Positions 4,183 to 62,880 of a DNA stretch of 64,000 nucleotides are shown here, in pieces (the stretch's first letter is position 1; the number at the start of each line of letters is the position of its first letter). The position numbers were made by a program, and so were the translations under genes. The notes under the pieces are model-generated. The model did no database searches. It was not told the DNA's origin and worked only from the letters and a program-made list of their open reading frames with translations. Where the stretch lies: positions 62,001 through 126,000 of the IMG/VR virus record IMGVR_UViG_3300024308_000302; one strand, 5' to 3'.

Positions 4183-5316
4183 TTAACCAGCGTCTTCGGT
4201 AGTCACACCAAGTGCTCCAAGGTCTACTTCGTCTAAAGACCAGTCAGACAAGTGATTACGAGAATAGAAAGTCAAGTAATCGTTTTTGAAGCCTCGAACC
4301 GCATTCATCACAAAAGAGAACTGTGGATGACCTTTCAGAGCAATTGCAACATCTTTGATAGGTTGGCCAACAAATTGCTTAGCAATTTCGTGGACTTCTT
4401 TATCAAGGTTTTCAATATGAGCCTTGATGCTATCATTGATATGATGAATGGTAGTCAAATCTGCTTCTGGTGCGTTCAATGCTAAGTAAGCAATATAATC
4501 ATCAAGTTTCTCTTCGACAACCAGTCGGGCAATGTCACGCTGACGAACAAAGGTAACAGCATGGTGCAATTCCATATACCATTTGGTTTTGATTTTAACC
4601 ATTTCACCATTCGCAAATTGAATTACATAACCTTCAATACCTTGAACAGTATTCAGCGACTTGATAAGGCTTGGCAAATCATAACCAACACCAAACAGCG
4701 GCTTGTTAACTGGAATATCAAACTTTGCAGCCAAAATTTCTTTTTCAACTGGCATGAGATATTCACCAGTGATATTGTCACGAACATGAAGCAAAGTCAT
4801 GTTTTCTTCGTCATATCGCAGAACAATACGATGGCTTGGCGAAGTGAACTCGAAAATAGGCGAAAGATTTGCCATCGAGCAATATTTAGTGAAATCGTAG
4901 TATTTCTGGTTTTTAGCAACAAACCCTTCTGATGCAACAGCAACATCAGATTTGAACGATTTTTTCGATTTCGCAAAGAACTGACCGTTCAGGAAACCAG
5001 CCGAAATCATCGAGCCGTCCATTTTGTCAAAACCCGCAACCATCGTATCCCAATTCAATACAGCGGGTTGAACTTCTGCACGCTCTGCAAGGTTGAAGAA
5101 TTTGTGCAGTGGGCGGGAAAGAATTTTGCCATCAGCATCAAAAGCGATACCACGGGCTTCTTTTTCCATCGGAGTGGTGAAGGACTCACCATTGCTGATA
5201 TTGTAGCAAATGACAGTAGCGTCATTCGATTGTTTGTTGATGCCAATGTATTCCTTATGTTGAACATGAGGAAGCATATCGTTGATGGTTTCGATACGTG
5301 GGAAGATACTGGGCAT
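4183..5316 (-). CDS. rnlA: T4 Rnl1-like RNA ligase
   Basis: Nucleotidyltransferase motifs KMDGS (I), EGYVI (IV), VKIK (V), plus KFFN and IFEF. Confidence 0.9.
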   Translation of the reverse strand: MPSIFPRIETINDMLPHVQHKEYIGINKQSNDATVICYNISNGESFTTPMEKEARGIAFDADGKILSRPLHKFFNLAERAEVQPAVLNWDTMVAGFDKMDGSMISAGFLNGQFFAKSKKSFKSDVAVASEGFVAKNQKYYDFTKYCSMANLSPIFEFTSPSHRIVLRYDEENMTLLHVRDNITGEYLMPVEKEILAAKFDIPVNKPLFGVGYDLPSLIKSLNTVQGIEGYVIQFANGEMVKIKTKWYMELHHAVTFVRQRDIARLVVEEKLDDYIAYLALNAPEADLTTIHHINDSIKAHIENLDKEVHEIAKQFVGQPIKDVAIALKGHPQFSFVMNAVRGFKNDYLTFYSRNHLSDWSLDEVDLGALGVTTEDAG

Positions 5317-20817: not shown

Positions 20818-21282
20818 CTATCTTTTTTCAATAACGTCAAGACCATAAGTATCAGTTAACCAAGATAAATCTAACTTCCAGTCATATTTTGAGCGTTCTT
20901 CATATTCATTGAATGCTTTACCAATCAACTTGCCAGCTTGAGACATTGTTAGGGAATTAATAGCAGCAAAATGAGCTTTTGCAAGATCTGATTTACCTAA
21001 TACATTCGCAAACCCAATATGTTTAACCATATGACAATCAGGGCATAATGAAACCGTACCAGTCAACTTTTGAATTTTATTAACATCATCATATTCCCAT
21101 ACTTCATGACACTCAACAGGCCATTTAGGGCCAACAGAATTACAAATTTCGCAAACATGACCAGCTTTTTCAAAAGTATGTTTTTTTATCTTAGACCAAA
21201 TAGTAGAAGAAACATGATCTCGTACATTTGAAAACCAACAAGAACTTGGAACTAACTCAATAGTTAATTTTAATGATGACAT
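20818..21282 (-). CDS. HNH endonuclease-like protein
   Basis: CEIC...CHEVW...LCPDCHMVKH. Confidence 0.82.
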   Translation of the reverse strand: MSSLKLTIELVPSSCWFSNVRDHVSSTIWSKIKKHTFEKAGHVCEICNSVGPKWPVECHEVWEYDDVNKIQKLTGTVSLCPDCHMVKHIGFANVLGKSDLAKAHFAAINSLTMSQAGKLIGKAFNEYEERSKYDWKLDLSWLTDTYGLDVIEKR

Positions 21283-22254: not shown

Positions 22255-22686
22255 TTATGCACCAATTTGAATAGCATCTGGATGCTGTTCAAAACTGATT
22301 TTTTTATCTTCAACAACTTCTGCTGGTACATTATGTACGTTATCAAAATTGTGATACATTTCGAAAATACGAACAGGAATTTTTACTTCATTTGCAAAAT
22401 CAAGCAATTCTTGCATTTCTTGAAGTTTGGTATAAGTATTGCTTACAACAACAGAATGAGCGTCCAGCAGAGCATTTACAGCGTTCTGAAAACATGCATC
22501 TTTAGCGGCTTGATGGAAAGCAAAGTCAAATTTGTAGACGCCATTGGCATCAGTAAAGAAGCTATCATTTTCAAAATGCTTGTAACCTTTCTCAACAAAT
22601 TGTTTTGAAAAAGTCGTTTTTCCACTGCCGGGATGACCACGGACAATAACCAGTTCTTGATGAGAAGGAATAGATACAGAATTCAT
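22255..22686 (-). CDS. P-loop kinase (AAA_33 / polynucleotide-kinase-like)
   Basis: Walker A GHPGSGKTT, VVVSNT, HNVP. Confidence 0.85.
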   Translation of the reverse strand: MNSVSIPSHQELVIVRGHPGSGKTTFSKQFVEKGYKHFENDSFFTDANGVYKFDFAFHQAAKDACFQNAVNALLDAHSVVVSNTYTKLQEMQELLDFANEVKIPVRIFEMYHNFDNVHNVPAEVVEDKKISFEQHPDAIQIGA

Positions 22687-22751
22687 GATGAACACCTTAT
22701 GTTAATTTTTAAGAATTATAGCACAAAAGAAAGCTTTGGCCAACAAAAATA

Positions 22752-23995: not shown

Positions 23996-25162
23996 TTAAA
24001 TATTTTGCATCATAAAGACTTCGCAATCCTTAAAAGACATATCAGACAATGATTTCTCCATGCTATCAATAAGCAAAGAATTAACAGTAGAATATACCAA
24101 ATCAAAAAGCTCTGAAAGATCATTGCTGTAAATAGTGGTTTTATTTATGTTGTCTTTTATTGTAAAAATGTGAAAATTATTAGATTCATTTTTATTCGAG
24201 AAGACGATAGCAAAATCACCAAATGAAATATCAAAAAATGCCCGCTCAAAATCCATAGGGTGACTTTCTGAAAAATTCATTGTAATGATATATTTTTTTG
24301 AAATAAGAGCTTGATAATTATGATGTAAATTAAAAGCTGTTATAAATTTTTCAAAAATAGAATTGTTCAAATGATTTTTTATAATATCAATAAAAAATGA
24401 AGTATTATTTGAAACAAGCATTAAATTGTTTTCGGCACAAAAACCTTGGCGTACACTATTTTGATAATTTAAAAGGTTAATAGCATTAAAAACATCATCT
24501 TTATTTGGATATGTAAACATGTCGTGTCTAGTATTTGCATTAAATGTTGATGATAAAGTCAAACTTTTAAATTGATCAATATTAGAAGATTTAACTTCTG
24601 GATAATCAAAACCTGTAATAATGGCAATTTGTTTTCTAAATAAATCAACAGCTTGAATTACTGCTGAGCTAATATCATCAGCAATTGGAGTTAATTGTTG
24701 ATTGATACTGCAATGAGCAGGTTTAACGATTACACCTTGCTTTGTAATGTCAATTAAAATATCTGACTTTAAAGACATAATTTGTAAACATTGAACACCA
24801 TTTGAATCAATAGACTTTTTAATAAAAATAGCATTAGTGTTTTCAAGAAAATAAGTAGGAACTTGTTCTTTTTTGTAAAGGGCCAGATTTCTCATTTTAT
24901 CTTTATTAAAAAAATAAGAATTAAAATCGTTAATCAATGAAATAAATGATGCACAAGCAAGAGAATCAAATTTAAACAGTTCCATCAAAATTGTTTTAAT
25001 ATCATATCCAATAAAAAATGAATGATCATTTTCTACATTATAATTATTTACATAAGATTGTTGACGAAGAGAAGTCATCCTACCTACCAAAGATAATTTA
25101 TGAGTATCAATAAAAGATTGAATACTATTTGCATAATTGGAAAAAATATTATCAAAATACAT
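23996..25162 (-). CDS. hypothetical protein (very AT-rich)
   Basis: 388 aa ORF. Confidence 0.85.
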   Translation of the reverse strand: MYFDNIFSNYANSIQSFIDTHKLSLVGRMTSLRQQSYVNNYNVENDHSFFIGYDIKTILMELFKFDSLACASFISLINDFNSYFFNKDKMRNLALYKKEQVPTYFLENTNAIFIKKSIDSNGVQCLQIMSLKSDILIDITKQGVIVKPAHCSINQQLTPIADDISSAVIQAVDLFRKQIAIITGFDYPEVKSSNIDQFKSLTLSSTFNANTRHDMFTYPNKDDVFNAINLLNYQNSVRQGFCAENNLMLVSNNTSFFIDIIKNHLNNSIFEKFITAFNLHHNYQALISKKYIITMNFSESHPMDFERAFFDISFGDFAIVFSNKNESNNFHIFTIKDNINKTTIYSNDLSELFDLVYSTVNSLLIDSMEKSLSDMSFKDCEVFMMQNI

Positions 25163-25238
25163 AAAAAATCCTATAGAATTAGTTTAAAAACAATTTTAAA
25201 ACAAAAAAAGACCACTAAAGCGGCCTTCTGTTATAATT

Positions 25239-25361
25239 TGGTGGTTTTTAGGGGTTCGAACCCATCAATTAAGCCGTAGCCCAAAAGTTCTCTGTTAAAC
25301 ATACCCGAAAACAAATTCCAAGAACTATCTAGATCATTCAAAGTCTTTGCCAGAGAAAACC
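25239..25361 (-). ncRNA. 123 nt tRNA-like RNA
   Basis: GGTTTT/AAAACC acceptor-like stem, GGGTTCGAACCC T-arm, ACCA end, own promoter and terminator; no cloverleaf middle. Confidence 0.6.
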
Positions 25362-25408
25362 ATAAAACATATACTATCAAAAATCGATCTTAGATACAAG
25401 CATTTTTT

Positions 25409-25693
25409 TCAAAATAGTGATTTAAATTCTGTCTCATAGCGAACACCATCAATATGTTTGAAGTTCTTATGAAAAGATTGCATTTTTTGAATGTTTTTAA
25501 AACCATTAGGCCAAACAACTACCCAATCACCAACATCCCATTCAAACCGATCAATAAAATCATCAATAGTCTGAACACATCGTTCTTGTCCTGATGCACT
25601 CACAACAACAGCAATTGGTTTATTTTCTTCGCCAAATGCAGGATACATCAATTCAAGAGATTTAACAATTTGATAAGCATTTACAATAGTCAT
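25409..25693 (-). CDS. hypothetical protein
   Basis: 94 aa ORF. Confidence 0.75.
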   Translation of the reverse strand: MTIVNAYQIVKSLELMYPAFGEENKPIAVVVSASGQERCVQTIDDFIDRFEWDVGDWVVVWPNGFKNIQKMQSFHKNFKHIDGVRYETEFKSLF

Positions 25694-43351: not shown

Positions 43352-43360
43352 ACACAAAAA

Positions 43361-43382
43361 AAAGACCTCCGAAGAGGTCTTT
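43361..43382. terminator. bidirectional intrinsic terminator, identical to 62760-62781
   Basis: AAAGACCTC-CGAA-GAGGTCTTT with A/T tracts on both sides (UUCG loop on minus strand). Confidence 0.85.
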
Positions 43383-43394
43383 TGTGTTACTTAG

Positions 43395-43465
43395 CAAAGT
43401 GGCAGGATTTAAACCTACAACCTCCACTCGGTTAGAGTGGCTATCTGACATTGATATACACTTTA
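43395..43465 (-). ncRNA. tRNA-like element without CCA
   Basis: Full cloverleaf: TAAAGTG/CACTTTG, TATC/GATA, CCACT-CTAACCG-AGTGG, GTAGG-TTTAAAT-CCTGC; lacks D-loop GG and T-loop C. Confidence 0.6.
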
Positions 43466-43489
43466 CCTGTTCCGGCGTTTCAGCCTAAA

Positions 43490-43568
43490 CCCATATCAGT
43501 GATGGGACTTGAACCCATGACCTTCTCTCTTCAGAGATTATCTACCGACTGATATACACCTTTATGGG
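43490..43568 (-). ncRNA. tRNA-like element with extended acceptor stem and 4 nt anticodon loop
   Basis: TATC-AGTCGGTA-GATA, TCTCT-GAAG-AGAGA, ATGGG-TTCAAGT-CCCAT, GGTG/CACT plus CCCATA/TATGGG. Confidence 0.6.
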
Positions 43569-50171: not shown

Positions 50172-51301
50172 TTGACATCCACCCCATAGCTAAAGCAAGG
50201 AGATTCCTTCCGCAAGACGGCCATGCCCGACCGCAAGAATGTTAATGGCTGCGTTTACATCTCGTTGATGTATGCCACCGCATACATCACATTTCCATTC
50301 TCTTATTCGCAGCCCATCTAATCCTTTCGGCCCAGTTAAAGACTTACAAAGATGACAGGTGCGGGTTGTGTCTCTTTCGTCAACATTATTATCTAGTAGT
50401 ATGCCTGCGTTATCGCATTTATTTTTCAGCATACTTCTAATCAGGCCAAAGCCTGCATCTAATGTTGACTTTCCTCTTTTTGCTTTGAGCATTTTCTTAA
50501 TGCTCAAATCTCCAACATAAATCTCACTAAAATTTTTGACTAAATTTGTAGTGAATTTATGTAGAGAGTCTTTTCTAATATTAGCAATTTTAGCATGAAT
50601 ATTACGAACTCTTTTTTTATTATTAGCTCTTTGTTGAACTTTTAATTGTTTTTCATATTGTCTATAAACTTGATTATATTTAGTTTCACTTCCATCACTA
50701 GCCGTAGCAGAAGCTTTGAACCCAAGATCAACACCAACAGCCCCTTGACCAGACGACAATACTCTTGGTACTTCAACAACAACATTGAAGTACCAACGAC
50801 CACGAGCATCTTCATTAAAAGAAGCATTTTTAAATTCGTATTTTGACAGTTCATAACTGTCAAATACTGAATAATATTGCTTATTGAAATAAACTTGACC
50901 ATTCACCCAAGAAGCTGCTTTTGAGTTTATTGGAATCCAACCAAGACTTCTTCTTGATCCAAATGTTTTTCGCCATTTGAGTTTTTGTTTTTTAAACTGT
51001 TTTCTTCGAGTAGCATATTCTTTACAAATGGATTGAATGGTTTGACTATGCAAACCAAGTTCTTTAGCAGAACCATTGGTATATTTTTGCAGATCATAAT
51101 TTGAAAGAAACTTTTTATGTTCAACTATGTTTCTATGACTTAATTCATTAAGATAATTCCAAACAAAATTAACGTTCTTAGCCATCTGGCAAAGAACGTT
51201 TTTATGTTTATCTTTAACTCTAACTTTTAGAGTTTTTGTTGTATATTCGGAATTATTCATAGGTGAAATTATAGATTAAAATAAGAAAAAAGTCAATAGT
51301 T
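50172..51301 (-). mobile_element. IS200/IS605-family tnpB-only element
   Basis: Right end GGAATCTCC...GGGGTGGATGTCAA overlapping the tnpB stop; no tnpA; left end uncertain. Confidence 0.75.
50190..51260 (-). CDS. tnpB: RNA-guided endonuclease TnpB (rearranged RuvC type)
   Basis: VDLG, IYVGDL, VDERDTT, CHLC...CDVC Zn finger, RDVNAA. Confidence 0.93.
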   Translation of the reverse strand: MNNSEYTTKTLKVRVKDKHKNVLCQMAKNVNFVWNYLNELSHRNIVEHKKFLSNYDLQKYTNGSAKELGLHSQTIQSICKEYATRRKQFKKQKLKWRKTFGSRRSLGWIPINSKAASWVNGQVYFNKQYYSVFDSYELSKYEFKNASFNEDARGRWYFNVVVEVPRVLSSGQGAVGVDLGFKASATASDGSETKYNQVYRQYEKQLKVQQRANNKKRVRNIHAKIANIRKDSLHKFTTNLVKNFSEIYVGDLSIKKMLKAKRGKSTLDAGFGLIRSMLKNKCDNAGILLDNNVDERDTTRTCHLCKSLTGPKGLDGLRIREWKCDVCGGIHQRDVNAAINILAVGHGRLAEGISLL

Positions 51302-52415: not shown

Positions 52416-52510
52416 TGGCAGGCTGGTCTGGCCTCGAACCAGAAACTTCCACTCACTCGTGGTGTTTTACCAGAGATCCTATGGCGGATCTATTTTAAAC
52501 TACTCAACCT
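52416..52510 (-). ncRNA. 95 nt aberrant tRNA (Trp-like ends)
   Basis: AGG...CCTGCCA; T-arm TCTGG-TTCGAGG-CCAGA; hairpin inserted in D-loop; 6 nt anticodon loop. Confidence 0.6.
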
Positions 52511-52545
52511 ATTAAATCATAAGACCTACACTATCAAGCAAAAAC

Positions 52546-52651
52546 TGGTGGAAGCGGAAGGATTCGAACCTCCGTGCGGCAAGGTATAGGTTGGTAACAC
52601 CACCCCTCCGCTTAGTTACCTCAGAGTTAAGCCAGACTACTCTACACTTCC
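52546..52651 (-). ncRNA. 106 nt aberrant tRNA with expanded anticodon arm
   Basis: GGAAGTG/CGCTTCC+ACCA, GAGT/ACTC D-arm, GGAGG-TTCGAAT-CCTTC T-arm, ~50 nt between D and T arms. Confidence 0.7.
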
Positions 52652-52791: not shown

Positions 52792-52869
52792 TGGTTGCGG
52801 GAGCAGGATTTGAACCTGCGATCTCCAGCCAATGAAGCTGGTGAGTTAACCGGACTACTCCATCCCGCG
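52792..52869 (-). tRNA. tRNA-Met(CAT), fMet-like acceptor
   Basis: 78 nt cloverleaf with C1:A72 mismatch, anticodon loop TTCATTG, encoded CCA. Confidence 0.88.
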
Positions 52870-55524: not shown

Positions 55525-56478
55525 TCAAATGATTTTGAATTTTTTTACACCACCAAGAGAAAAATGAGCTATTTTGAAGTCCACCAACCTATACAGCAAG
55601 TCCAAAGTATAAGCAGAATCGTTGCCAGCATTATGAAGATAGCTTGAAAAATGGTTGACTTTAAGAGCTTTCAAAGCATCTTTAAGCGAAATATAATGAT
55701 TTTTGGCTGATTTTGCTGCAATGGATTCACATTCATTATAAATAACAGAAGATGTATCAATACATTTAATATGTTCAATTTGAGTCATATCAAAATTACA
55801 ATGACGCAAAATTTTGAATTCAATAGGTAATGCGTGACCAATAATAAAATCAACATCTTTTAGATGCTCAATGAGGATTGGGGCAAAATCATCATGAGTT
55901 ACGAGCACAGATGTGCCAAATTTGAAAGTGTCCATTCGTTTTTTAGTTGTTGTATAGTGAAAATGATTAACAACGCCATCAAAAGAAATAGTGACGCCCA
56001 TTTCAAAGATTTCTATTTTTTTTGATGAATCACGATATTCAAAATCAAGGGAAAGAATCTTTTTTCCTTCCAAGCTAATAGGAAGGGGAGATTCAAATTT
56101 TTCTGCAAATGCAGCTTTCTTTTCTTTGCGAACAGCAATACGTTTTTGTTCAATATCATTGAAAATAAGTTTGAATTCTTCATGGGAAGAAACATCAAAA
56201 AATTCAAGTTTTTCTTTTGAAAATTTTGCATACTTTTTGAATGCTGTAACTTTAAGTTCCAAAGAAAATAAACTATTTACATAATCAATAATTGGAATCA
56301 AAGAATTTTTTCCAATATGAATTTTATCTTCAAATATACAGAAAGAAGAAACAAGACCTTTATCAAAAAGATCTTGTTCATTGAAAACAGATTTAAATTG
56401 TGAAGCCAAATCACGATTTTCAATAAAAATAGATTGATTTAAAAAAGTAGATTTGAGAACTGCAAAGTTATAAATCAT
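55525..56478 (-). CDS. DEDDh 3'-5' exonuclease domain protein
   Basis: LDFEY, IIGH, IDTS, HNAGNDSAYT. Confidence 0.85.
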   Translation of the reverse strand: MIYNFAVLKSTFLNQSIFIENRDLASQFKSVFNEQDLFDKGLVSSFCIFEDKIHIGKNSLIPIIDYVNSLFSLELKVTAFKKYAKFSKEKLEFFDVSSHEEFKLIFNDIEQKRIAVRKEKKAAFAEKFESPLPISLEGKKILSLDFEYRDSSKKIEIFEMGVTISFDGVVNHFHYTTTKKRMDTFKFGTSVLVTHDDFAPILIEHLKDVDFIIGHALPIEFKILRHCNFDMTQIEHIKCIDTSSVIYNECESIAAKSAKNHYISLKDALKALKVNHFSSYLHNAGNDSAYTLDLLYRLVDFKIAHFSLGGVKKFKII

Positions 56479-56596
56479 GGTTAATCCTATTTTCATTAAT
56501 CAAAGGAATTTAAATAATTAATGCATTATAGCATAGGCTGGAGAAAAAGACCAACAAAAAAGGGCCGACTGGCCCTCTCTGAAACTTTTTTGATGT

Positions 56597-56993: not shown

Positions 56994-58061
56994 TCAGAAT
57001 GAATAAATATTCATTTTAGGAAGTTCCCAAAGATAAGGTGCAATTTTAATACGTTTCTTTTGAATATTATAAGGATGCTCAATAAATTCAACCATTTGAA
57101 GAACAGCCATCAAAGTATAAGCCGCATCATTACCAGCATTATGCAAAATCAAAGAGTTATGTTCAATTTTCAAAATATGAAGCATATTTGACAAAGAAAC
57201 AGATTTATTTTTCATGTTTTCAAAGTAAAAATTGAAACGAGATTTCATTAGACCTTGAGAATCAATTACTTTCAGGTTATCAATAGACAGAATATCAATA
57301 CCATGATGTTTGAGAACAATATGTTCACTTGAAACAGAATGGCCAATAAGGTAATCAACATTAAGCAAGCGATCTTTAACAATAATCAACAATTCTTGAA
57401 CTGTAACAAATTGACTGTTACCAAACAGAAACTTATTACTTACATCTTTAGGATAGTGGTTCTCACCAATAGTGTCATTAACAATATAATGCTCATAGCT
57501 AATGACACCATCCTTAAAAATAGCCATACCACATTCCAAAATCGTCCAGTCTTTATTGGAATCAAACTCAAAATCAATAGCCATGATACGATTTGACTTG
57601 AAATTGGCAGATAACTGACTATTGAGTTTTTCTGTAATTTGAATTTTTTCTATACTTTCGGCTTTCTTTTCTTCTTTAATAGCAGCCCGAACAGCATCTT
57701 TACTTTCTTTATGCTCACCATTCATATTGAAACGAATTTGCTCAACAGCATCTTCAAATGTCAAGTAATCAGAAACTGTAAATGCAATTTCAGCTTTAGT
57801 TGATTGCGGGTCTTGAATATCAAATCCAAATTGATTTTTAATAGCATTCATGATTTTTGCAAGTTGCATTTCATCAAAAAGAATTGTTGAGCTTTTAGAA
57901 ACATAAAGTTCATCAACAAAATCTTTTTTTGCAACTTTAGAAAGCTTATAATTTTCCATGAAATCTGCAAAGACAATTTTTCTTTCTTTTTTAGTCTTAA
58001 ATTGATCAATCAAGCTTTCTTTGAAAGCTACTTGAACAGAGTTCCAGAAATAAAGGTTCAT
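56994..58061 (-). CDS. DEDDh 3'-5' exonuclease domain protein (paralogue of 55525..56478)
   Basis: IDFEF, LIGH, IDSQ, HNAGNDAAYT. Confidence 0.85.
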   Translation of the reverse strand: MNLYFWNSVQVAFKESLIDQFKTKKERKIVFADFMENYKLSKVAKKDFVDELYVSKSSTILFDEMQLAKIMNAIKNQFGFDIQDPQSTKAEIAFTVSDYLTFEDAVEQIRFNMNGEHKESKDAVRAAIKEEKKAESIEKIQITEKLNSQLSANFKSNRIMAIDFEFDSNKDWTILECGMAIFKDGVISYEHYIVNDTIGENHYPKDVSNKFLFGNSQFVTVQELLIIVKDRLLNVDYLIGHSVSSEHIVLKHHGIDILSIDNLKVIDSQGLMKSRFNFYFENMKNKSVSLSNMLHILKIEHNSLILHNAGNDAAYTLMAVLQMVEFIEHPYNIQKKRIKIAPYLWELPKMNIYSF

Positions 58062-62690: not shown

Positions 62691-62786
62691 AGTTAACCTT
62701 TTGGTGAAAATTAATACTTGATTATACAACAAAACAAAATATTTGTCACCAGAAATAAAAAAGACCTCCGAAGAGGTCTTTTAAAT

Positions 62787-62845
62787 GTGTAGTAGGATTC
62801 GAACCTAACAAATGGTTAACAAACCAAGCTCCCAACTGAGTACAC
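62787..62845 (-). ncRNA. miniature tRNA-like RNA (Asn-derived?)
   Basis: GTGTA/TACAC, CTC-AGTTGG-GAG, TGGT-TTGTTA-ACCA, TAGG-TTCGAAT-CCTA; own TTGCAA-17-TATAAT promoter and terminator; no CCA. Confidence 0.55.
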
Positions 62846-62880
62846 TGGCAATTATATCTAATTAGAGGAATTATTGCAAG

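What the first reader, a model, noticed from the sequence alone, without database searches (positions are those of the whole stretch)
25201..25399. Stand-alone 123 nt RNA with tRNA-like ends but no cloverleaf core
It has its own promoter (TTGTAT-17-TAGTAT, +1 about 3 nt from the 5' G) and terminator. The RNA has an acceptor-like stem, a GTTCGAAC T-loop and an ACCA end, but ~85 nt of unrelated sequence (AGTTCT/AGAACT or TTCTCTG/CAGAGAA stems) replace the D and anticodon arms. T4 encodes stable tRNA-ended RNAs of unknown function (species 1/2) as a loose precedent.
Basis: partly seen in the sequence, partly recalled or inferred. Interest (0 to 1): 0.62.

Follow-up and report, generated by a model that had tools for sequence, protein, structure and literature searches.

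The report
Phage tRNA-like stable RNA gene
An uncultivated jumbo phage has a small RNA gene with its own promoter and terminator that keeps the top half of a tRNA (acceptor stem, T arm, ACCA end) but replaces the decoding half with a nearly invariant hairpin; it is conserved in six related metagenomic phages and is built like the still-unexplained 'species 1' RNA of phage T4.

Summary
On the minus strand, 25361..25239 encodes a 123-nt RNA. An extended -10 promoter (25399..25371) precedes it and an intrinsic terminator (25229..25206) follows. ARAGORN and Rfam do not call it.

Six distinct homologues from other metagenomes sit in the same place, after a cinA-like gene and a 94-aa ORF. The RNA is the best-conserved local element: 87-93% identity, against 67-83% for the ORF DNA just upstream and 51-59% for the spacer downstream.

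The 49-aa ORF that spans it is broken in all six relatives, so it is not a protein gene. The T loop varies only at positions 59/60, as in real tRNAs. One hairpin shows a compensatory U-A/C-G swap, and four other changes keep wobble pairs.

The consensus fold is a four-way junction: an acceptor stem, a helix carrying an almost invariant 40-nt hairpin (loop GAUCUAGAUA) plus a variable linker, a UACG-capped hairpin, and a T arm.

It has no anticodon loop, no tmRNA features and no detectable sequence homology to T4 RNA C. It does share T4 RNA C's architecture.

Most likely it is a stable tRNA mimic whose tRNA-like part ensures processing and stability, while the invariant hairpin binds a partner. 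Its function and expression are untested.

The parts
25394..25399 (-). -35 element (TTGTAT; TTGCAA/TTGCAC in relatives)
   Evidence: Read. The position and the TTG are conserved in alignment A1. The generic scan did not call it.
25371..25379 (-). Extended -10 element (TG-n-TAGTAT)
   Evidence: TGnTAGTAT is invariant in all relatives.
25362..25366 (-). Probable short 5' leader (start site inferred, not mapped)
   Evidence: Inferred from the distance to the -10 hexamer. L011/L012 carry a 9-nt insertion here, upstream of an unchanged GG. This suggests that the mature 5' end is set by processing.
25239..25361 (-). Mature-form tRNA-like RNA, 123 nt (GG...ACCA)
   Evidence: Sequence. Seven distinct variants aligned in A4. 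Covariance model R1 scores them 132-153 bits.
25356..25361 (-). Acceptor stem, 5' strand (RNA positions 1-6)
   Evidence: Pairs with positions 114-119. L016 has G1.U119. L011/L012 have an A4.A116 mismatch.
25243..25248 (-). Acceptor stem, 3' strand (RNA positions 114-119)
   Evidence: Invariant except C119 to U in L016, which keeps the pair as a wobble.
25351..25356 (-). Helix P2, 5' strand (positions 6-11)
   Evidence: RNAalifold pairs 6-11 with 68-73. The A73-to-G change in 3 variants gives U.G.
25289..25294 (-). Helix P2, 3' strand (positions 68-73)
   Evidence: Four of these bases are deleted in L011 only.
25311..25350 (-). Nearly invariant inner hairpin (positions 12-51), the proposed effector module
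   Evidence: Only 3 of 40 columns vary among the 7 variants. Fold. The U20/C20 change keeps the pair with G43.
25326..25335 (-). 10-nt hairpin loop GAUCUAGAUA containing the 8-nt palindrome AUCUAGAU
   Evidence: Invariant in all variants.
25295..25310 (-). Single-stranded linker (positions 52-67), variable except for an invariant GG at 57-58
   Evidence: 5 of 16 columns vary and there is a 1-nt length change. The GG could be a D-loop G18/G19 analogue; this is an inference.
25266..25287 (-). Second hairpin (positions 75-96) capped by a UACG tetraloop; analogue of an anticodon arm or long variable arm
   Evidence: Pair 79:92 is C-G in 4 variants and U-A in 3, a compensatory change. Pair 80:91 is A-U or G.U.
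25251..25263 (-). T arm: GGG / UUCGAAY / CCC (positions 99-111)
   Evidence: Loop positions 54-58 (UUCGA) are invariant. Only tRNA positions 59/60 vary (AC, AU, CC).
25239..25242 (-). Discriminator A plus encoded CCA 3' end
   Evidence: Invariant in all variants.
25199..25229 (-). Intrinsic terminator (10-pair stem, 4-nt loop, U run)
   Evidence: The stem is kept in relatives through different sequences.
25409..25693 (-). 94-aa ORF always found directly upstream of the RNA (possible partner, unproven)
   Evidence: The order cinA, 94-aa ORF, RNA holds in all relatives. Matches phrog_32537. The fold model is weak and OB-like only.

Best explanation
This is a real, independently transcribed gene for a stable, non-decoding tRNA mimic.

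Proposed mechanism:
1. Host sigma-70 RNA polymerase starts at the extended -10 promoter and stops at the intrinsic terminator.
2. The acceptor/T-arm minihelix with its encoded ACCA is treated like a pre-tRNA. RNase P trims the short 5' leader, and the usual tRNA 3' nucleases remove the trailer that carries the terminator. This leaves a nuclease-resistant 123-nt RNA.
3. The tRNA-like part acts as a chassis for processing and stability. The working part is the almost invariant 40-nt hairpin with its palindromic loop, inserted where the D/anticodon half of a tRNA would be. It binds a protein or another RNA, from host or phage, early in infection.

SHOWN:
- the gene unit and its conservation
- that it does not code for protein
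- the tRNA-type T loop, acceptor pairing and ACCA end
- the four-way-junction consensus fold
- the same architecture in T4 RNA C

INFERRED:
- transcription, RNase P and 3' processing, and stability
- that the hairpin is the effector
- the identity of the partner, which is unknown; the always-adjacent 94-aa protein is one candidate

My confidence that it is a functional tRNA-like ncRNA gene is about 0.9. The confidence value given for this explanation (0.45) is for the full chassis-plus-effector mechanism.
For: Gene unit: promoter, RNA and terminator lie in a 246-nt gap between two minus-strand ORFs.

Seven distinct variants occur at the same position after cinA and the 94-aa ORF, in contigs from ENA and Logan metagenomes.

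Conservation: identity to the window is 87-93% for the RNA, 80-90% for cinA DNA, 67-83% for the 94-aa ORF DNA and 51-59% for the downstream spacer. The inner hairpin has 3 variable columns in 40.

Not a protein gene: the 49-aa ORF has stops or frameshifts in all six relatives.

tRNA-type constraints:
- UUCGA of the T loop is invariant, and only positions 59/60 vary.
- G1-C119 becomes G.U in one variant.
- ACCA is invariant.

Structure: 98.6% of pair cells are standard pairs, against 30-58% when the 3' partners are slid by 1-3 columns. Pair 79:92 is compensatory, and there are four wobble-compatible one-sided changes.

Leader: it is 9 nt longer in L011/L012 while the GG start is unchanged, which fits a 5' end set by processing.

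Precedents:
- T4 RNA C has the same layout, with 19 covarying pairs.
- RNase P is known to mature non-tRNA substrates including phage RNAs (PMC11143913).
- Engineered 'tRNA scaffolds' show that an RNA inserted into a tRNA body is processed and stabilised in bacteria (PMC3753655 and PMC3401473).
Against: - There are no expression data of any kind.
- The family is narrow: 7 variants, with cinA DNA still 80-90% identical. Covariation is thin (one compensatory pair), and the shuffle control is not decisive (14 of 500 shuffles reach the observed value).
- The single-sequence fold is no better than shuffles (z = -0.5).
- The tRNA-like part is imperfect: a 3-bp T stem, 11 stacked layers rather than 12, an A.A mismatch in the acceptor stem of L011/L012, and loss of the P2 3' strand in L011.
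- No partner was found. There is no antisense target better than shuffled controls and no recognisable RNA-binding gene nearby.
- Invariance of the hairpin could instead reflect a DNA-level constraint.
Confidence: 0.45

Rival explanations
1. Decoy or sponge for a host defence enzyme that attacks tRNA ends. The acceptor/T minihelix with CCA soaks up, for example, nucleotidyltransferase toxins of the MenT/AbiEii type or acceptor-stem nucleases, and so protects cellular and phage tRNAs.
For: The gene lies in an early-type region with counter-defence flavour. The window holds an RnlA-like RNA ligase and a Pnk-like kinase. Relatives carry Acb1-like and Lar-like genes. MenT toxins act on tRNA acceptor ends, and AbiE is an anti-phage system (PMC10435456, PMC7450476 and PMC7725324). 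The ACCA end and the 3' acceptor strand are nearly invariant.
Against: A decoy needs only the tRNA-like half, yet the most conserved part is the non-tRNA hairpin. No defence or anti-defence family was matched by the neighbouring proteins. The host and its defence systems are unknown.
Confidence: 0.15
2. Base-pairing regulatory RNA whose tRNA-like part serves only for RNase P maturation, in the manner of the P1/P7 C4 antisense RNA. The invariant loop or linker would pair with a conserved phage or host mRNA.
For: RNase P matures the phage C4 antisense RNA and M3 RNA (PMC11143913). A long invariant stretch is what a fixed pairing partner would impose.
Against: The best duplexes between the core and the window or the relatives' loci are no better than for shuffled cores (-28.1 against -26.6 to -30.3 kcal/mol). 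Exact matches are only chance 9-11-mers. The predicted single-stranded linker is the most variable part. The core has no exact match in 185,579 species genomes.
Confidence: 0.12
3. Aminoacylated tRNA mimic that works on or near the ribosome (tmRNA-like rescue or tagging) or as an amino-acid donor. It would be charged by a synthetase that ignores the anticodon (Ser, Leu, Ala type).
For: It has an acceptor stem, a canonical T loop, discriminator A73 and an encoded CCA. A long extra hairpin sits next to the T arm, as in class II tRNAs. From memory only, the 5' segment UCUGG-n4-GAC resembles the tmRNA D-loop region.
Against: There is no G3.U70; the pair is U3-A117. No reading frame or stop is conserved in the interior. 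There are no pseudoknots. Neither Rfam tmRNA or mt-tmRNA models nor ARAGORN tmRNA give a hit at sensible thresholds. No SmpB-like gene was seen.
Confidence: 0.08
4. DNA-level element. The invariant block with the ATCTAGAT palindrome would be a protein-binding site (an operator, or a replication, packaging or homing site), and the tRNA-like features would be incidental.
For: An 8-bp perfect palindrome sits inside a 35-nt invariant block.
Against: The motif is not repeated elsewhere in the window beyond chance (6 hits at one mismatch or fewer against 3.7 expected). The promoter, the terminator with compensating changes, the tRNA-type pattern in the T loop and the compensatory pair all point to selection on a transcript.
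Confidence: 0.05
5. Decaying tRNA gene, an intron-containing tRNA, or the tRNA-derived remnant of an integration site.
For: With its threshold lowered to 80%, ARAGORN proposes a tRNA-Asn(GUU) with a 35-nt intron and a long variable arm.
Against: That model uses an upstream 5' strand that L011/L012 replace. It also needs a U20-A71 pair, which is C.A in 6 of 7 variants; I checked this pair by reading the alignment. The pair count used an anticodon-stem register one column off from ARAGORN's (see Tried and rejected), so its 41% paired figure is not evidence against the ARAGORN model itself. The interior is the most conserved part, which is the opposite of decay. The element has its own conserved promoter and terminator and lies among phage genes.
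Confidence: 0.03
6. Small protein gene: the 49-aa TTG-initiated ORF at 25380..25231.
For: An uninterrupted 49-codon frame spans the RNA in the window.
Against: The frame is broken by stops or frameshifts in all six relatives. There is no Shine-Dalgarno sequence, and the TTG lies inside the -10 region. Conservation shows no third-position pattern.
Confidence: 0.02

Closest known systems
Phage T4 RNA C (species 1 RNA, rnaC) and its homologues in Tevenvirinae
   Same: Both are phage-encoded stable RNAs of about 120-140 nt, and both form a four-way junction. It comprises an acceptor-like stem closed by the two ends, a long irregular arm in place of the D/anticodon half, a second hairpin just 5' of the T arm, and a canonical T arm with a UUCGAAU-type loop. 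The function of T4 RNA C is still unknown (PMC9697503 and PMC3014915). Neither RNA is in Rfam.
   Different: No sequence homology is detectable in either direction: model R1 on T4 gives 7.3 bits (E 4.5), and model R2 on this family gives at most 8.1 bits (E 5.4). T4 RNA C lies at the end of the tRNA cluster and is annotated there, whereas this RNA stands alone with its own promoter and terminator. CCA is encoded here but not in T4. The T stem is 5 bp in T4 and 3 bp here. The variable linker lies inside helix P2 here and outside it in T4. T4 RNA C was classed as a late RNA, whereas this promoter looks like a host sigma-70 type.
tRNA-like domain of tmRNA
   Same: Acceptor stem, T arm and ACCA end, no anticodon arm, and a helix (P2) leaving the junction that carries a large insertion.
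   Different: No G3.U70, no conserved reading frame, no pseudoknots, one third of the length, and no match to the tmRNA models.
Engineered 'tRNA scaffold' RNAs (an RNA of interest grafted into a tRNA body)
   Same: A foreign hairpin is displayed on a tRNA body that supplies processing signals and nuclease resistance (PMC3753655 and PMC3401473). This is the closest functional analogy for the proposed mechanism.
   Different: Those are artificial and keep intact D and T arms. This one is natural, has no recognisable D arm, and its processing is untested.
P1/P7 C4 antisense RNA and phage M3 RNA (non-tRNA RNase P substrates)
   Same: Phage small RNAs whose maturation depends on a tRNA-like acceptor/T mimic recognised by RNase P (PMC11143913).
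   Different: C4 acts by antisense pairing to a known target, and no target was found here. There is no sequence relation.
Class II (long variable arm) tRNAs
   Same: Acceptor stem, discriminator A, CCA, a canonical T loop, and an extra hairpin immediately 5' of the T arm.
   Different: No D arm, no 7-nt anticodon loop, a 3-bp T stem, and not accepted by ARAGORN or the Rfam tRNA model.

Membership tests
Canonical tRNA (Rfam RF00005 / ARAGORN) | Recognised by tRNA covariance and heuristic models at standard thresholds | tested here: not met
   ARAGORN finds only 2 tRNAs elsewhere in the window. There is no RF00005 hit at the locus even at E up to 10.
Canonical tRNA (Rfam RF00005 / ARAGORN) | D arm and a 5-bp anticodon stem with a 7-nt loop | tested here: not met
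   The consensus fold has neither. The only cloverleaf-with-intron proposal appears at an 80% threshold. Its U20-A71 pair is C.A in 6 of 7 variants (alignment). The pair count was run one column out of register and is not used here.
Canonical tRNA (Rfam RF00005 / ARAGORN) | T loop U54-U55-C56-R57-A58 closed by G53-C61; acceptor stem; NCCA end | tested here: met
   UUCGA is invariant, G101-C109 closes the loop, positions 59/60 vary, there are 6 acceptor pairs, and ACCA is encoded.
tmRNA | G3.U70 alanine identity pair in the acceptor stem | tested here: not met
   Pair 3:117 is U-A in all 7 variants.
tmRNA | Internal tag reading frame with a conserved resume codon and stop; pseudoknots | tested here: not met
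   No frame is conserved. The linker varies in length and sequence. ARAGORN tmRNA and the Rfam tmRNA models give nothing at usable thresholds.
T4 RNA C (species 1 RNA) family | Detectable sequence/structure homology to the Tevenvirinae rnaC alignment | tested here: not met
   R2 (built from 5 rnaC homologues) scores L003's copy 8.1 bits (E 5.4) and does not list the window copy. R1 scores T4 rnaC 7.3 bits (E 4.5). blastn finds nothing.
T4 RNA C (species 1 RNA) family | Architecture: end-to-end acceptor-like stem, long arm, second hairpin, T arm with a UUCGAAU-type loop | tested here: met
   Compare the consensus folds of A4 and A5.
T4 RNA C (species 1 RNA) family | Location at the 3' end of the phage tRNA gene cluster | tested here: not met
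   This RNA lies between protein genes with its own promoter and terminator. The tRNA cluster of this phage is about 27 kb away, at 52.4-52.9 kb.
T4 RNA C (species 1 RNA) family | Accumulates as a stable RNA in infected cells | not testable with these tools
   No expression data are available, and the phage is known only from metagenomes.
Small protein gene | Reading frame maintained among homologues | tested here: not met
   Stops or frameshifts occur in all six relatives.
Y RNA-like (YrlA) tRNA mimics | Match to the Rfam YrlA/Y RNA models, with a Ro60 (Rsr) gene nearby | tested here: not met
   No Rfam hit. No TROVE/Ro family appears among the neighbours scanned. Only part of the 290-kb genome could be inspected.

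The most novel reading that the evidence does not exclude
The RNA and the always-adjacent 94-aa protein form a small phage ribonucleoprotein. In this reading a natural tRNA scaffold presents an invariant, possibly dimerising (palindromic kissing-loop) hairpin. The particle would be charged, or would engage tRNA-handling machinery, to neutralise a tRNA-directed host defence or to reprogramme translation. T4 RNA C and the two anticodon-less tRNA-like RNAs in this phage's own tRNA cluster would then be independent versions of the same strategy. That would give the first functional handle on a class of phage RNAs unexplained since the 1970s.
Probability: 0.15. Interest if true: 0.8.

Novelty: new variant of a known kind. 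Interest (0 to 1): 0.55.

Why it matters
Phage T4's species 1 and 2 RNAs have been known for about fifty years, and reviews and omics papers still describe them as having unknown function.

This element is a second tRNA-shaped stable-RNA family with no detectable sequence similarity to T4 RNA C, found in a very different jumbo phage. It has a cleaner anatomy: its own promoter and terminator, an encoded CCA, and a clearly delimited invariant module.

Whether the two share ancestry cannot be told from these data. If they arose separately, the same architecture in both suggests that tRNA-bodied non-decoding RNAs are a recurrent phage tool rather than a T4 oddity. Either way, the family offers a compact 200-bp cassette for testing what such RNAs do.

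It also shows that standard tRNA and Rfam annotation misses these genes completely.

Tried and rejected
**Searches for relatives**
- Near and distant blastn of the locus against 50,697 GenBank phages found no relative.
- The downstream 388-aa protein is an orphan.
- IMG/VR scans with the 3' end, the core and the 94-aa alignment returned only the source contig.
- The JGI metagenome scan with a 20-mer of the core returned the source contig plus two G+C-rich chance hits.
- Both genome-contig scans returned nothing.
- Loci of more distant cinA homologues (46-69% identity) lack the RNA.

**Alternative structures and homology**
It was not preferred.
- The ARAGORN intron-tRNA model was rejected. Note that I counted pairs for its anticodon stem one column out of register. 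The decisive pair U20-A71 was therefore checked by reading the alignment, where it is C.A in 6 of 7 variants.
- Homology to T4 RNA C was tested with covariance models both ways and was not significant.

**Targets and partners**
- The antisense-target search was no better than shuffled controls.
- The loop motif is not enriched in the window.
- The fold of the 94-aa protein has pLDDT 64 and only sub-threshold OB-fold-like matches (E at least 0.06), so no claim is made from it.
- PADLOC, Pfam and PHROGs scans of the neighbours found no RNA-binding or defence family.

**Literature**
- Searches for the sample accessions and for phage tRNA-like anti-defence RNAs found nothing relevant.

Full report
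**What is at the coordinates**

The element lies on the minus strand, in a 246-nt gap. The gap runs from the stop codon of a 94-aa ORF (25409..25693) to the start of a 388-aa ORF (23996..25162). Reading 5' to 3' on that strand, the parts are:

- a -35 hexamer TTGTAT (25399..25394)
- a 17-nt spacer ending in TG
- a -10 hexamer TAGTAT (25376..25371)
- ten bases later, a 123-nt stretch (25361..25239) that begins GGUUUUC and ends CUAAAAACC-ACCA
- a 9-nt A/U-rich trailer
- an intrinsic terminator (25229..25206 plus a T run)

The generic promoter scan did not list this promoter, because it matches only 7 of 12 consensus positions. My case for it is the extended -10 TG and its conservation, described below.

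ARAGORN at default settings and all 4227 Rfam families find nothing here, even at E up to 10. Folded alone, the RNA is no more stable than shuffled versions (z = -0.5). One sequence therefore proves nothing.

**Source and relatives**

The window is part of IMG/VR contig IMGVR_UViG_3300024308_000302 (290 kb). The same DNA also sits on a 1.54-Mb JGI contig. No GenBank phage is similar at the DNA level, and the 388-aa neighbour is an orphan.

The upstream 94-aa ORF does have homologues at 50-85% identity. Their contigs, from ENA and Logan assemblies, show the same gene order: a cinA-like gene, the 94-aa ORF, a 260-290-nt gap, then a variable next gene. Every gap holds the same element. Seven distinct variants are now known.

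**It is under selection as an RNA**

- Identity to the window is 87-93% for the RNA, 80-90% for cinA DNA, 67-83% for the 94-aa ORF DNA and 51-59% for the spacer after the terminator.
- The 49-codon frame that spans the RNA in the window is interrupted by stops or frameshifts in all six relatives. A small protein is excluded.
- The TGnTAGTAT motif and the TTG of the -35 hexamer are conserved. The terminator stem is kept with different sequences.
- In L011/L012 a 9-nt insertion lengthens the leader while the GG start is unchanged. This fits a 5' end defined by processing rather than by the transcription start.
- In the T loop, UUCGA (tRNA positions 54-58) is invariant and only positions 59/60 vary (AC, AU, CC). 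From established tRNA knowledge, this is the pattern seen in true tRNAs.
- G1-C119 becomes G1.U119 in L016.

**Fold**

RNAalifold on the seven variants gives these elements:

- an acceptor stem (1-5/115-119; U6 can pair with either A114 or A73)
- helix P2 (6-11/68-73)
- inside P2, a 40-nt hairpin (12-51) with two internal loops and a 10-nt loop GAUCUAGAUA, followed by a 16-nt single-stranded linker (52-67)
- a second hairpin (75-96) capped by a UACG tetraloop
- a T arm (99-101/109-111)

This is a four-way junction, which is cloverleaf topology. P2 can be read as a D stem whose loop carries the insertion; an invariant GG at 57-58 in the otherwise variable linker would then be the G18/G19 analogue. 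Alternatively, P2 can be read as an anticodon stem, with the second hairpin as a long variable arm. I could not decide between these two readings.

On pair counts, 98.6% of pair cells are standard pairs, against 30-58% when the 3' partners are slid by 1-3 columns. Pair 79:92 switches between C-G and U-A. Four further changes are wobble-compatible: 1:119, 6:73, 20:43 and 80:91.

The exceptions are an A4.A116 mismatch in L011/L012, a U.U at 76:95 in the window, loss of G23 in L017, and loss of four P2 bases in L011.

Variation by segment (variable columns out of total):

| Segment | Variable columns |
|---|---|
| Inner hairpin (12-51) | 3 of 40 |
| Linker (52-67) | 5 of 16 |
| Second hairpin (75-98) | 8 of 24 |
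| T arm (99-111) | 2 of 13 |
| Acceptor stem and 3' end | 2 of 17 |

The non-tRNA hairpin is thus the most constrained module.

The tRNA-like half is imperfect. The T stem has three G-C pairs plus a U.U. The acceptor/T stack has 11 layers, including a C.A mismatch.

**What it is not**

- *Not a canonical or intron-containing tRNA.* The only such model comes from ARAGORN with its threshold lowered to 80%. It needs a pair that is C.A in six of seven variants, and a 5' strand that L011/L012 replace.
- *Not tmRNA.* Pair 3:117 is U-A, no frame is conserved, and no model matches.
- *Not a detectable antisense regulator.* Duplexes with the window and the relatives' loci are no better than for shuffled cores. 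The core has no exact match in the species genome collection.

**Closest known**

T4 rnaC (species 1 RNA) was fetched with four diverged homologues from Kanagawavirus, Moonvirus and Karamvirus. Their consensus fold has 19 covarying pairs. It comprises an acceptor-like stem closed by the two ends, a long irregular arm, a linker, a second 10-bp hairpin and a 5-bp T arm with a UUCGAAU loop.

That is the same plan as here. However, covariance models built from either family do not find the other at significant scores (7-8 bits, E about 5). I therefore treat the two as sharing an architecture without detectable homology.

Other differences from T4 RNA C:

- This RNA stands alone rather than at the end of the tRNA cluster.
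- It encodes its CCA.
- It has a host-type promoter.

The function of T4 RNA C and RNA D is still stated to be unknown (PMC3014915 and PMC9697503).

**Most likely mechanism**

I commit to a tRNA-bodied stable RNA. The acceptor/T minihelix with ACCA recruits RNase P and the tRNA 3'-end nucleases and protects the RNA. Two lines of precedent support this:

- RNase P is known to mature non-tRNA phage RNAs (PMC11143913).
- Engineered tRNA scaffolds work this way (PMC3753655 and PMC3401473).

The invariant hairpin is the effector and binds an unknown partner. Its loop holds an 8-nt perfect palindrome, so loop-loop dimerisation or binding of a dimeric protein is conceivable. This is inference only.

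The always-adjacent 94-aa protein is a candidate partner. Its fold model is poor and its OB-fold-like matches are below threshold. Its C-terminal half has homologues in phiKZ-like Pseudomonas jumbo phages. In the four of these that I examined, the homologue lies 130-900 nt downstream of a tRNA gene. This is a weak lead.

I put about 0.9 on 'functional tRNA-like ncRNA gene' and 0.45 on the chassis-plus-effector mechanism. The rivals are:

- acceptor-end decoy against tRNA-directed defence: 0.15
- RNase P-matured antisense RNA: 0.12
- aminoacylated tmRNA-like mimic: 0.08
- DNA-level element: 0.05
- decaying or intron-containing tRNA: 0.03
- small protein: 0.02

**Context**

The window is a one-strand array of small early-type genes. 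It also holds:

- an RnlA-like RNA ligase (4183..5316)
- a Pnk-like kinase (22255..22695)
- an HNH endonuclease (20818..21282)
- a TnpB-like gene (50190..51260)
- a tRNA cluster at 52.4-52.9 kb

The tRNA cluster includes two further anticodon-less tRNA-like elements ending in ACCA and GCCA. Their position just downstream of tRNA-Met recalls T4's RNA D and RNA C.

**Verdict**

This is a new RNA family, absent from Rfam and from tRNA finders. It belongs to a known but unexplained kind: phage tRNA-shaped stable RNAs. Evidence for the gene is strong. Evidence for the detailed fold is moderate. Evidence for function is indirect.

Noticed in passing
window 52546-52651 (-): A 106-nt tRNA-like element (GGAAGUG...CGCUUCC-ACCA). 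It has a D-arm-like stem-loop and a canonical T arm but no 7-nt anticodon loop. ARAGORN and the Rfam tRNA model miss it; there is a weak tmRNA hit (14.6 bits) and a weak T4-rnaC-model hit (11.9 bits).
   Followed up: partly
window 52420-52511 (-): A second anticodon-less tRNA-like element (AGGUUGA...CCAGCCU-GCCA). Two hairpins replace the D/anticodon arms, and the T arm is UCUGG-UUCGAGG-CCAGA (fold z = -2.5). Together with the element above, it lies just downstream of tRNA-Met (52795-52869), a layout like T4's tRNA cluster followed by RNA D and RNA C.
   Followed up: partly
window 62786-62850 (-), promoter to 62885, terminator to about 62755: A tRNA-like stub of about 60 nt with a 5-bp acceptor stem, a D-arm-like CUC/GAG stem, an 8-nt 'anticodon' loop and a 4-bp T stem. 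It has its own TTGCAA-17-TATAAT promoter. Its terminator (AAGACCTCTTCGGAGGTCTTTTTT) recurs verbatim at about 43360-43385.
   Followed up: no
window 43393-43563 (-): The two tRNA finders disagree. ARAGORN calls tRNA-Val(AAC) at 43393-43466. Rfam calls a different tRNA at 43494-43563, whose anticodon loop is only 4 nt in the alignment.
   Followed up: no
window 4183-5316 (-) and 22255-22695 (-): An RnlA-like RNA ligase (phrog_562, 1e-66) and a Pnk-like P-loop kinase (AAA_33; phrog_505 polynucleotide kinase). Together they could form a T4-type tRNA healing-and-sealing kit.
   Followed up: partly
window 25409-25693 (-); loci L031-L034: The C-terminal half of the 94-aa ORF upstream of the RNA has homologues in phiKZ-like Pseudomonas jumbo phages (37-40% identity). 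In the four I examined, the homologue sits 130-900 nt downstream of a tRNA gene (Asn, Thr or Asp), behind a 61-aa ORF. The AF2 model has pLDDT 64, and its OB-fold-like matches are below threshold.
   Followed up: partly
L014 (Ga0247725_1000001) versus L001 (IMGVR_UViG_3300024308_000302): The same DNA is recorded on a 1.54-Mb JGI metagenome contig and as a 290-kb IMG/VR viral genome. It is unresolved whether the phage is integrated, misassembled or part of something larger.
   Followed up: no
window 50190-51260 (-); L003 8270-10214: The window has a TnpB-like transposase gene. Relative L003 carries an IS200/605 unit (Y1 TnpA plus a TnpB/Cas12f-like gene) inserted about 2 kb downstream of its RNA copy; the other relatives lack it.
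   Followed up: no
alignment A4, columns 4 and 17 (window 25358 and 25345); L011/L012: L011/L012 change U4 to A and G17 to A together and have a 9-nt longer leader. U4 to A creates an A.A mismatch in the acceptor stem. No fold model considered explains the paired change. L011 alone also lacks AGAG (columns 69-72).
   Followed up: partly
window 55525-56496 (-) and 56994-58061 (-): Two adjacent paralogous genes with a DEDDh exonuclease C-terminal domain (PF21762).
   Followed up: no
loci L007/L008/L016 (5340-5822 and equivalents); L007 2051-2458; L011 2100-2324: Relatives carry a second cinA/PncC-like gene about 2 kb downstream of the RNA. They also have a weak Acb1-like (anti-CBASS) gene and a Lar-like restriction-alleviation gene nearby, which suggests the neighbourhood is rich in counter-defence genes.
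   Followed up: no
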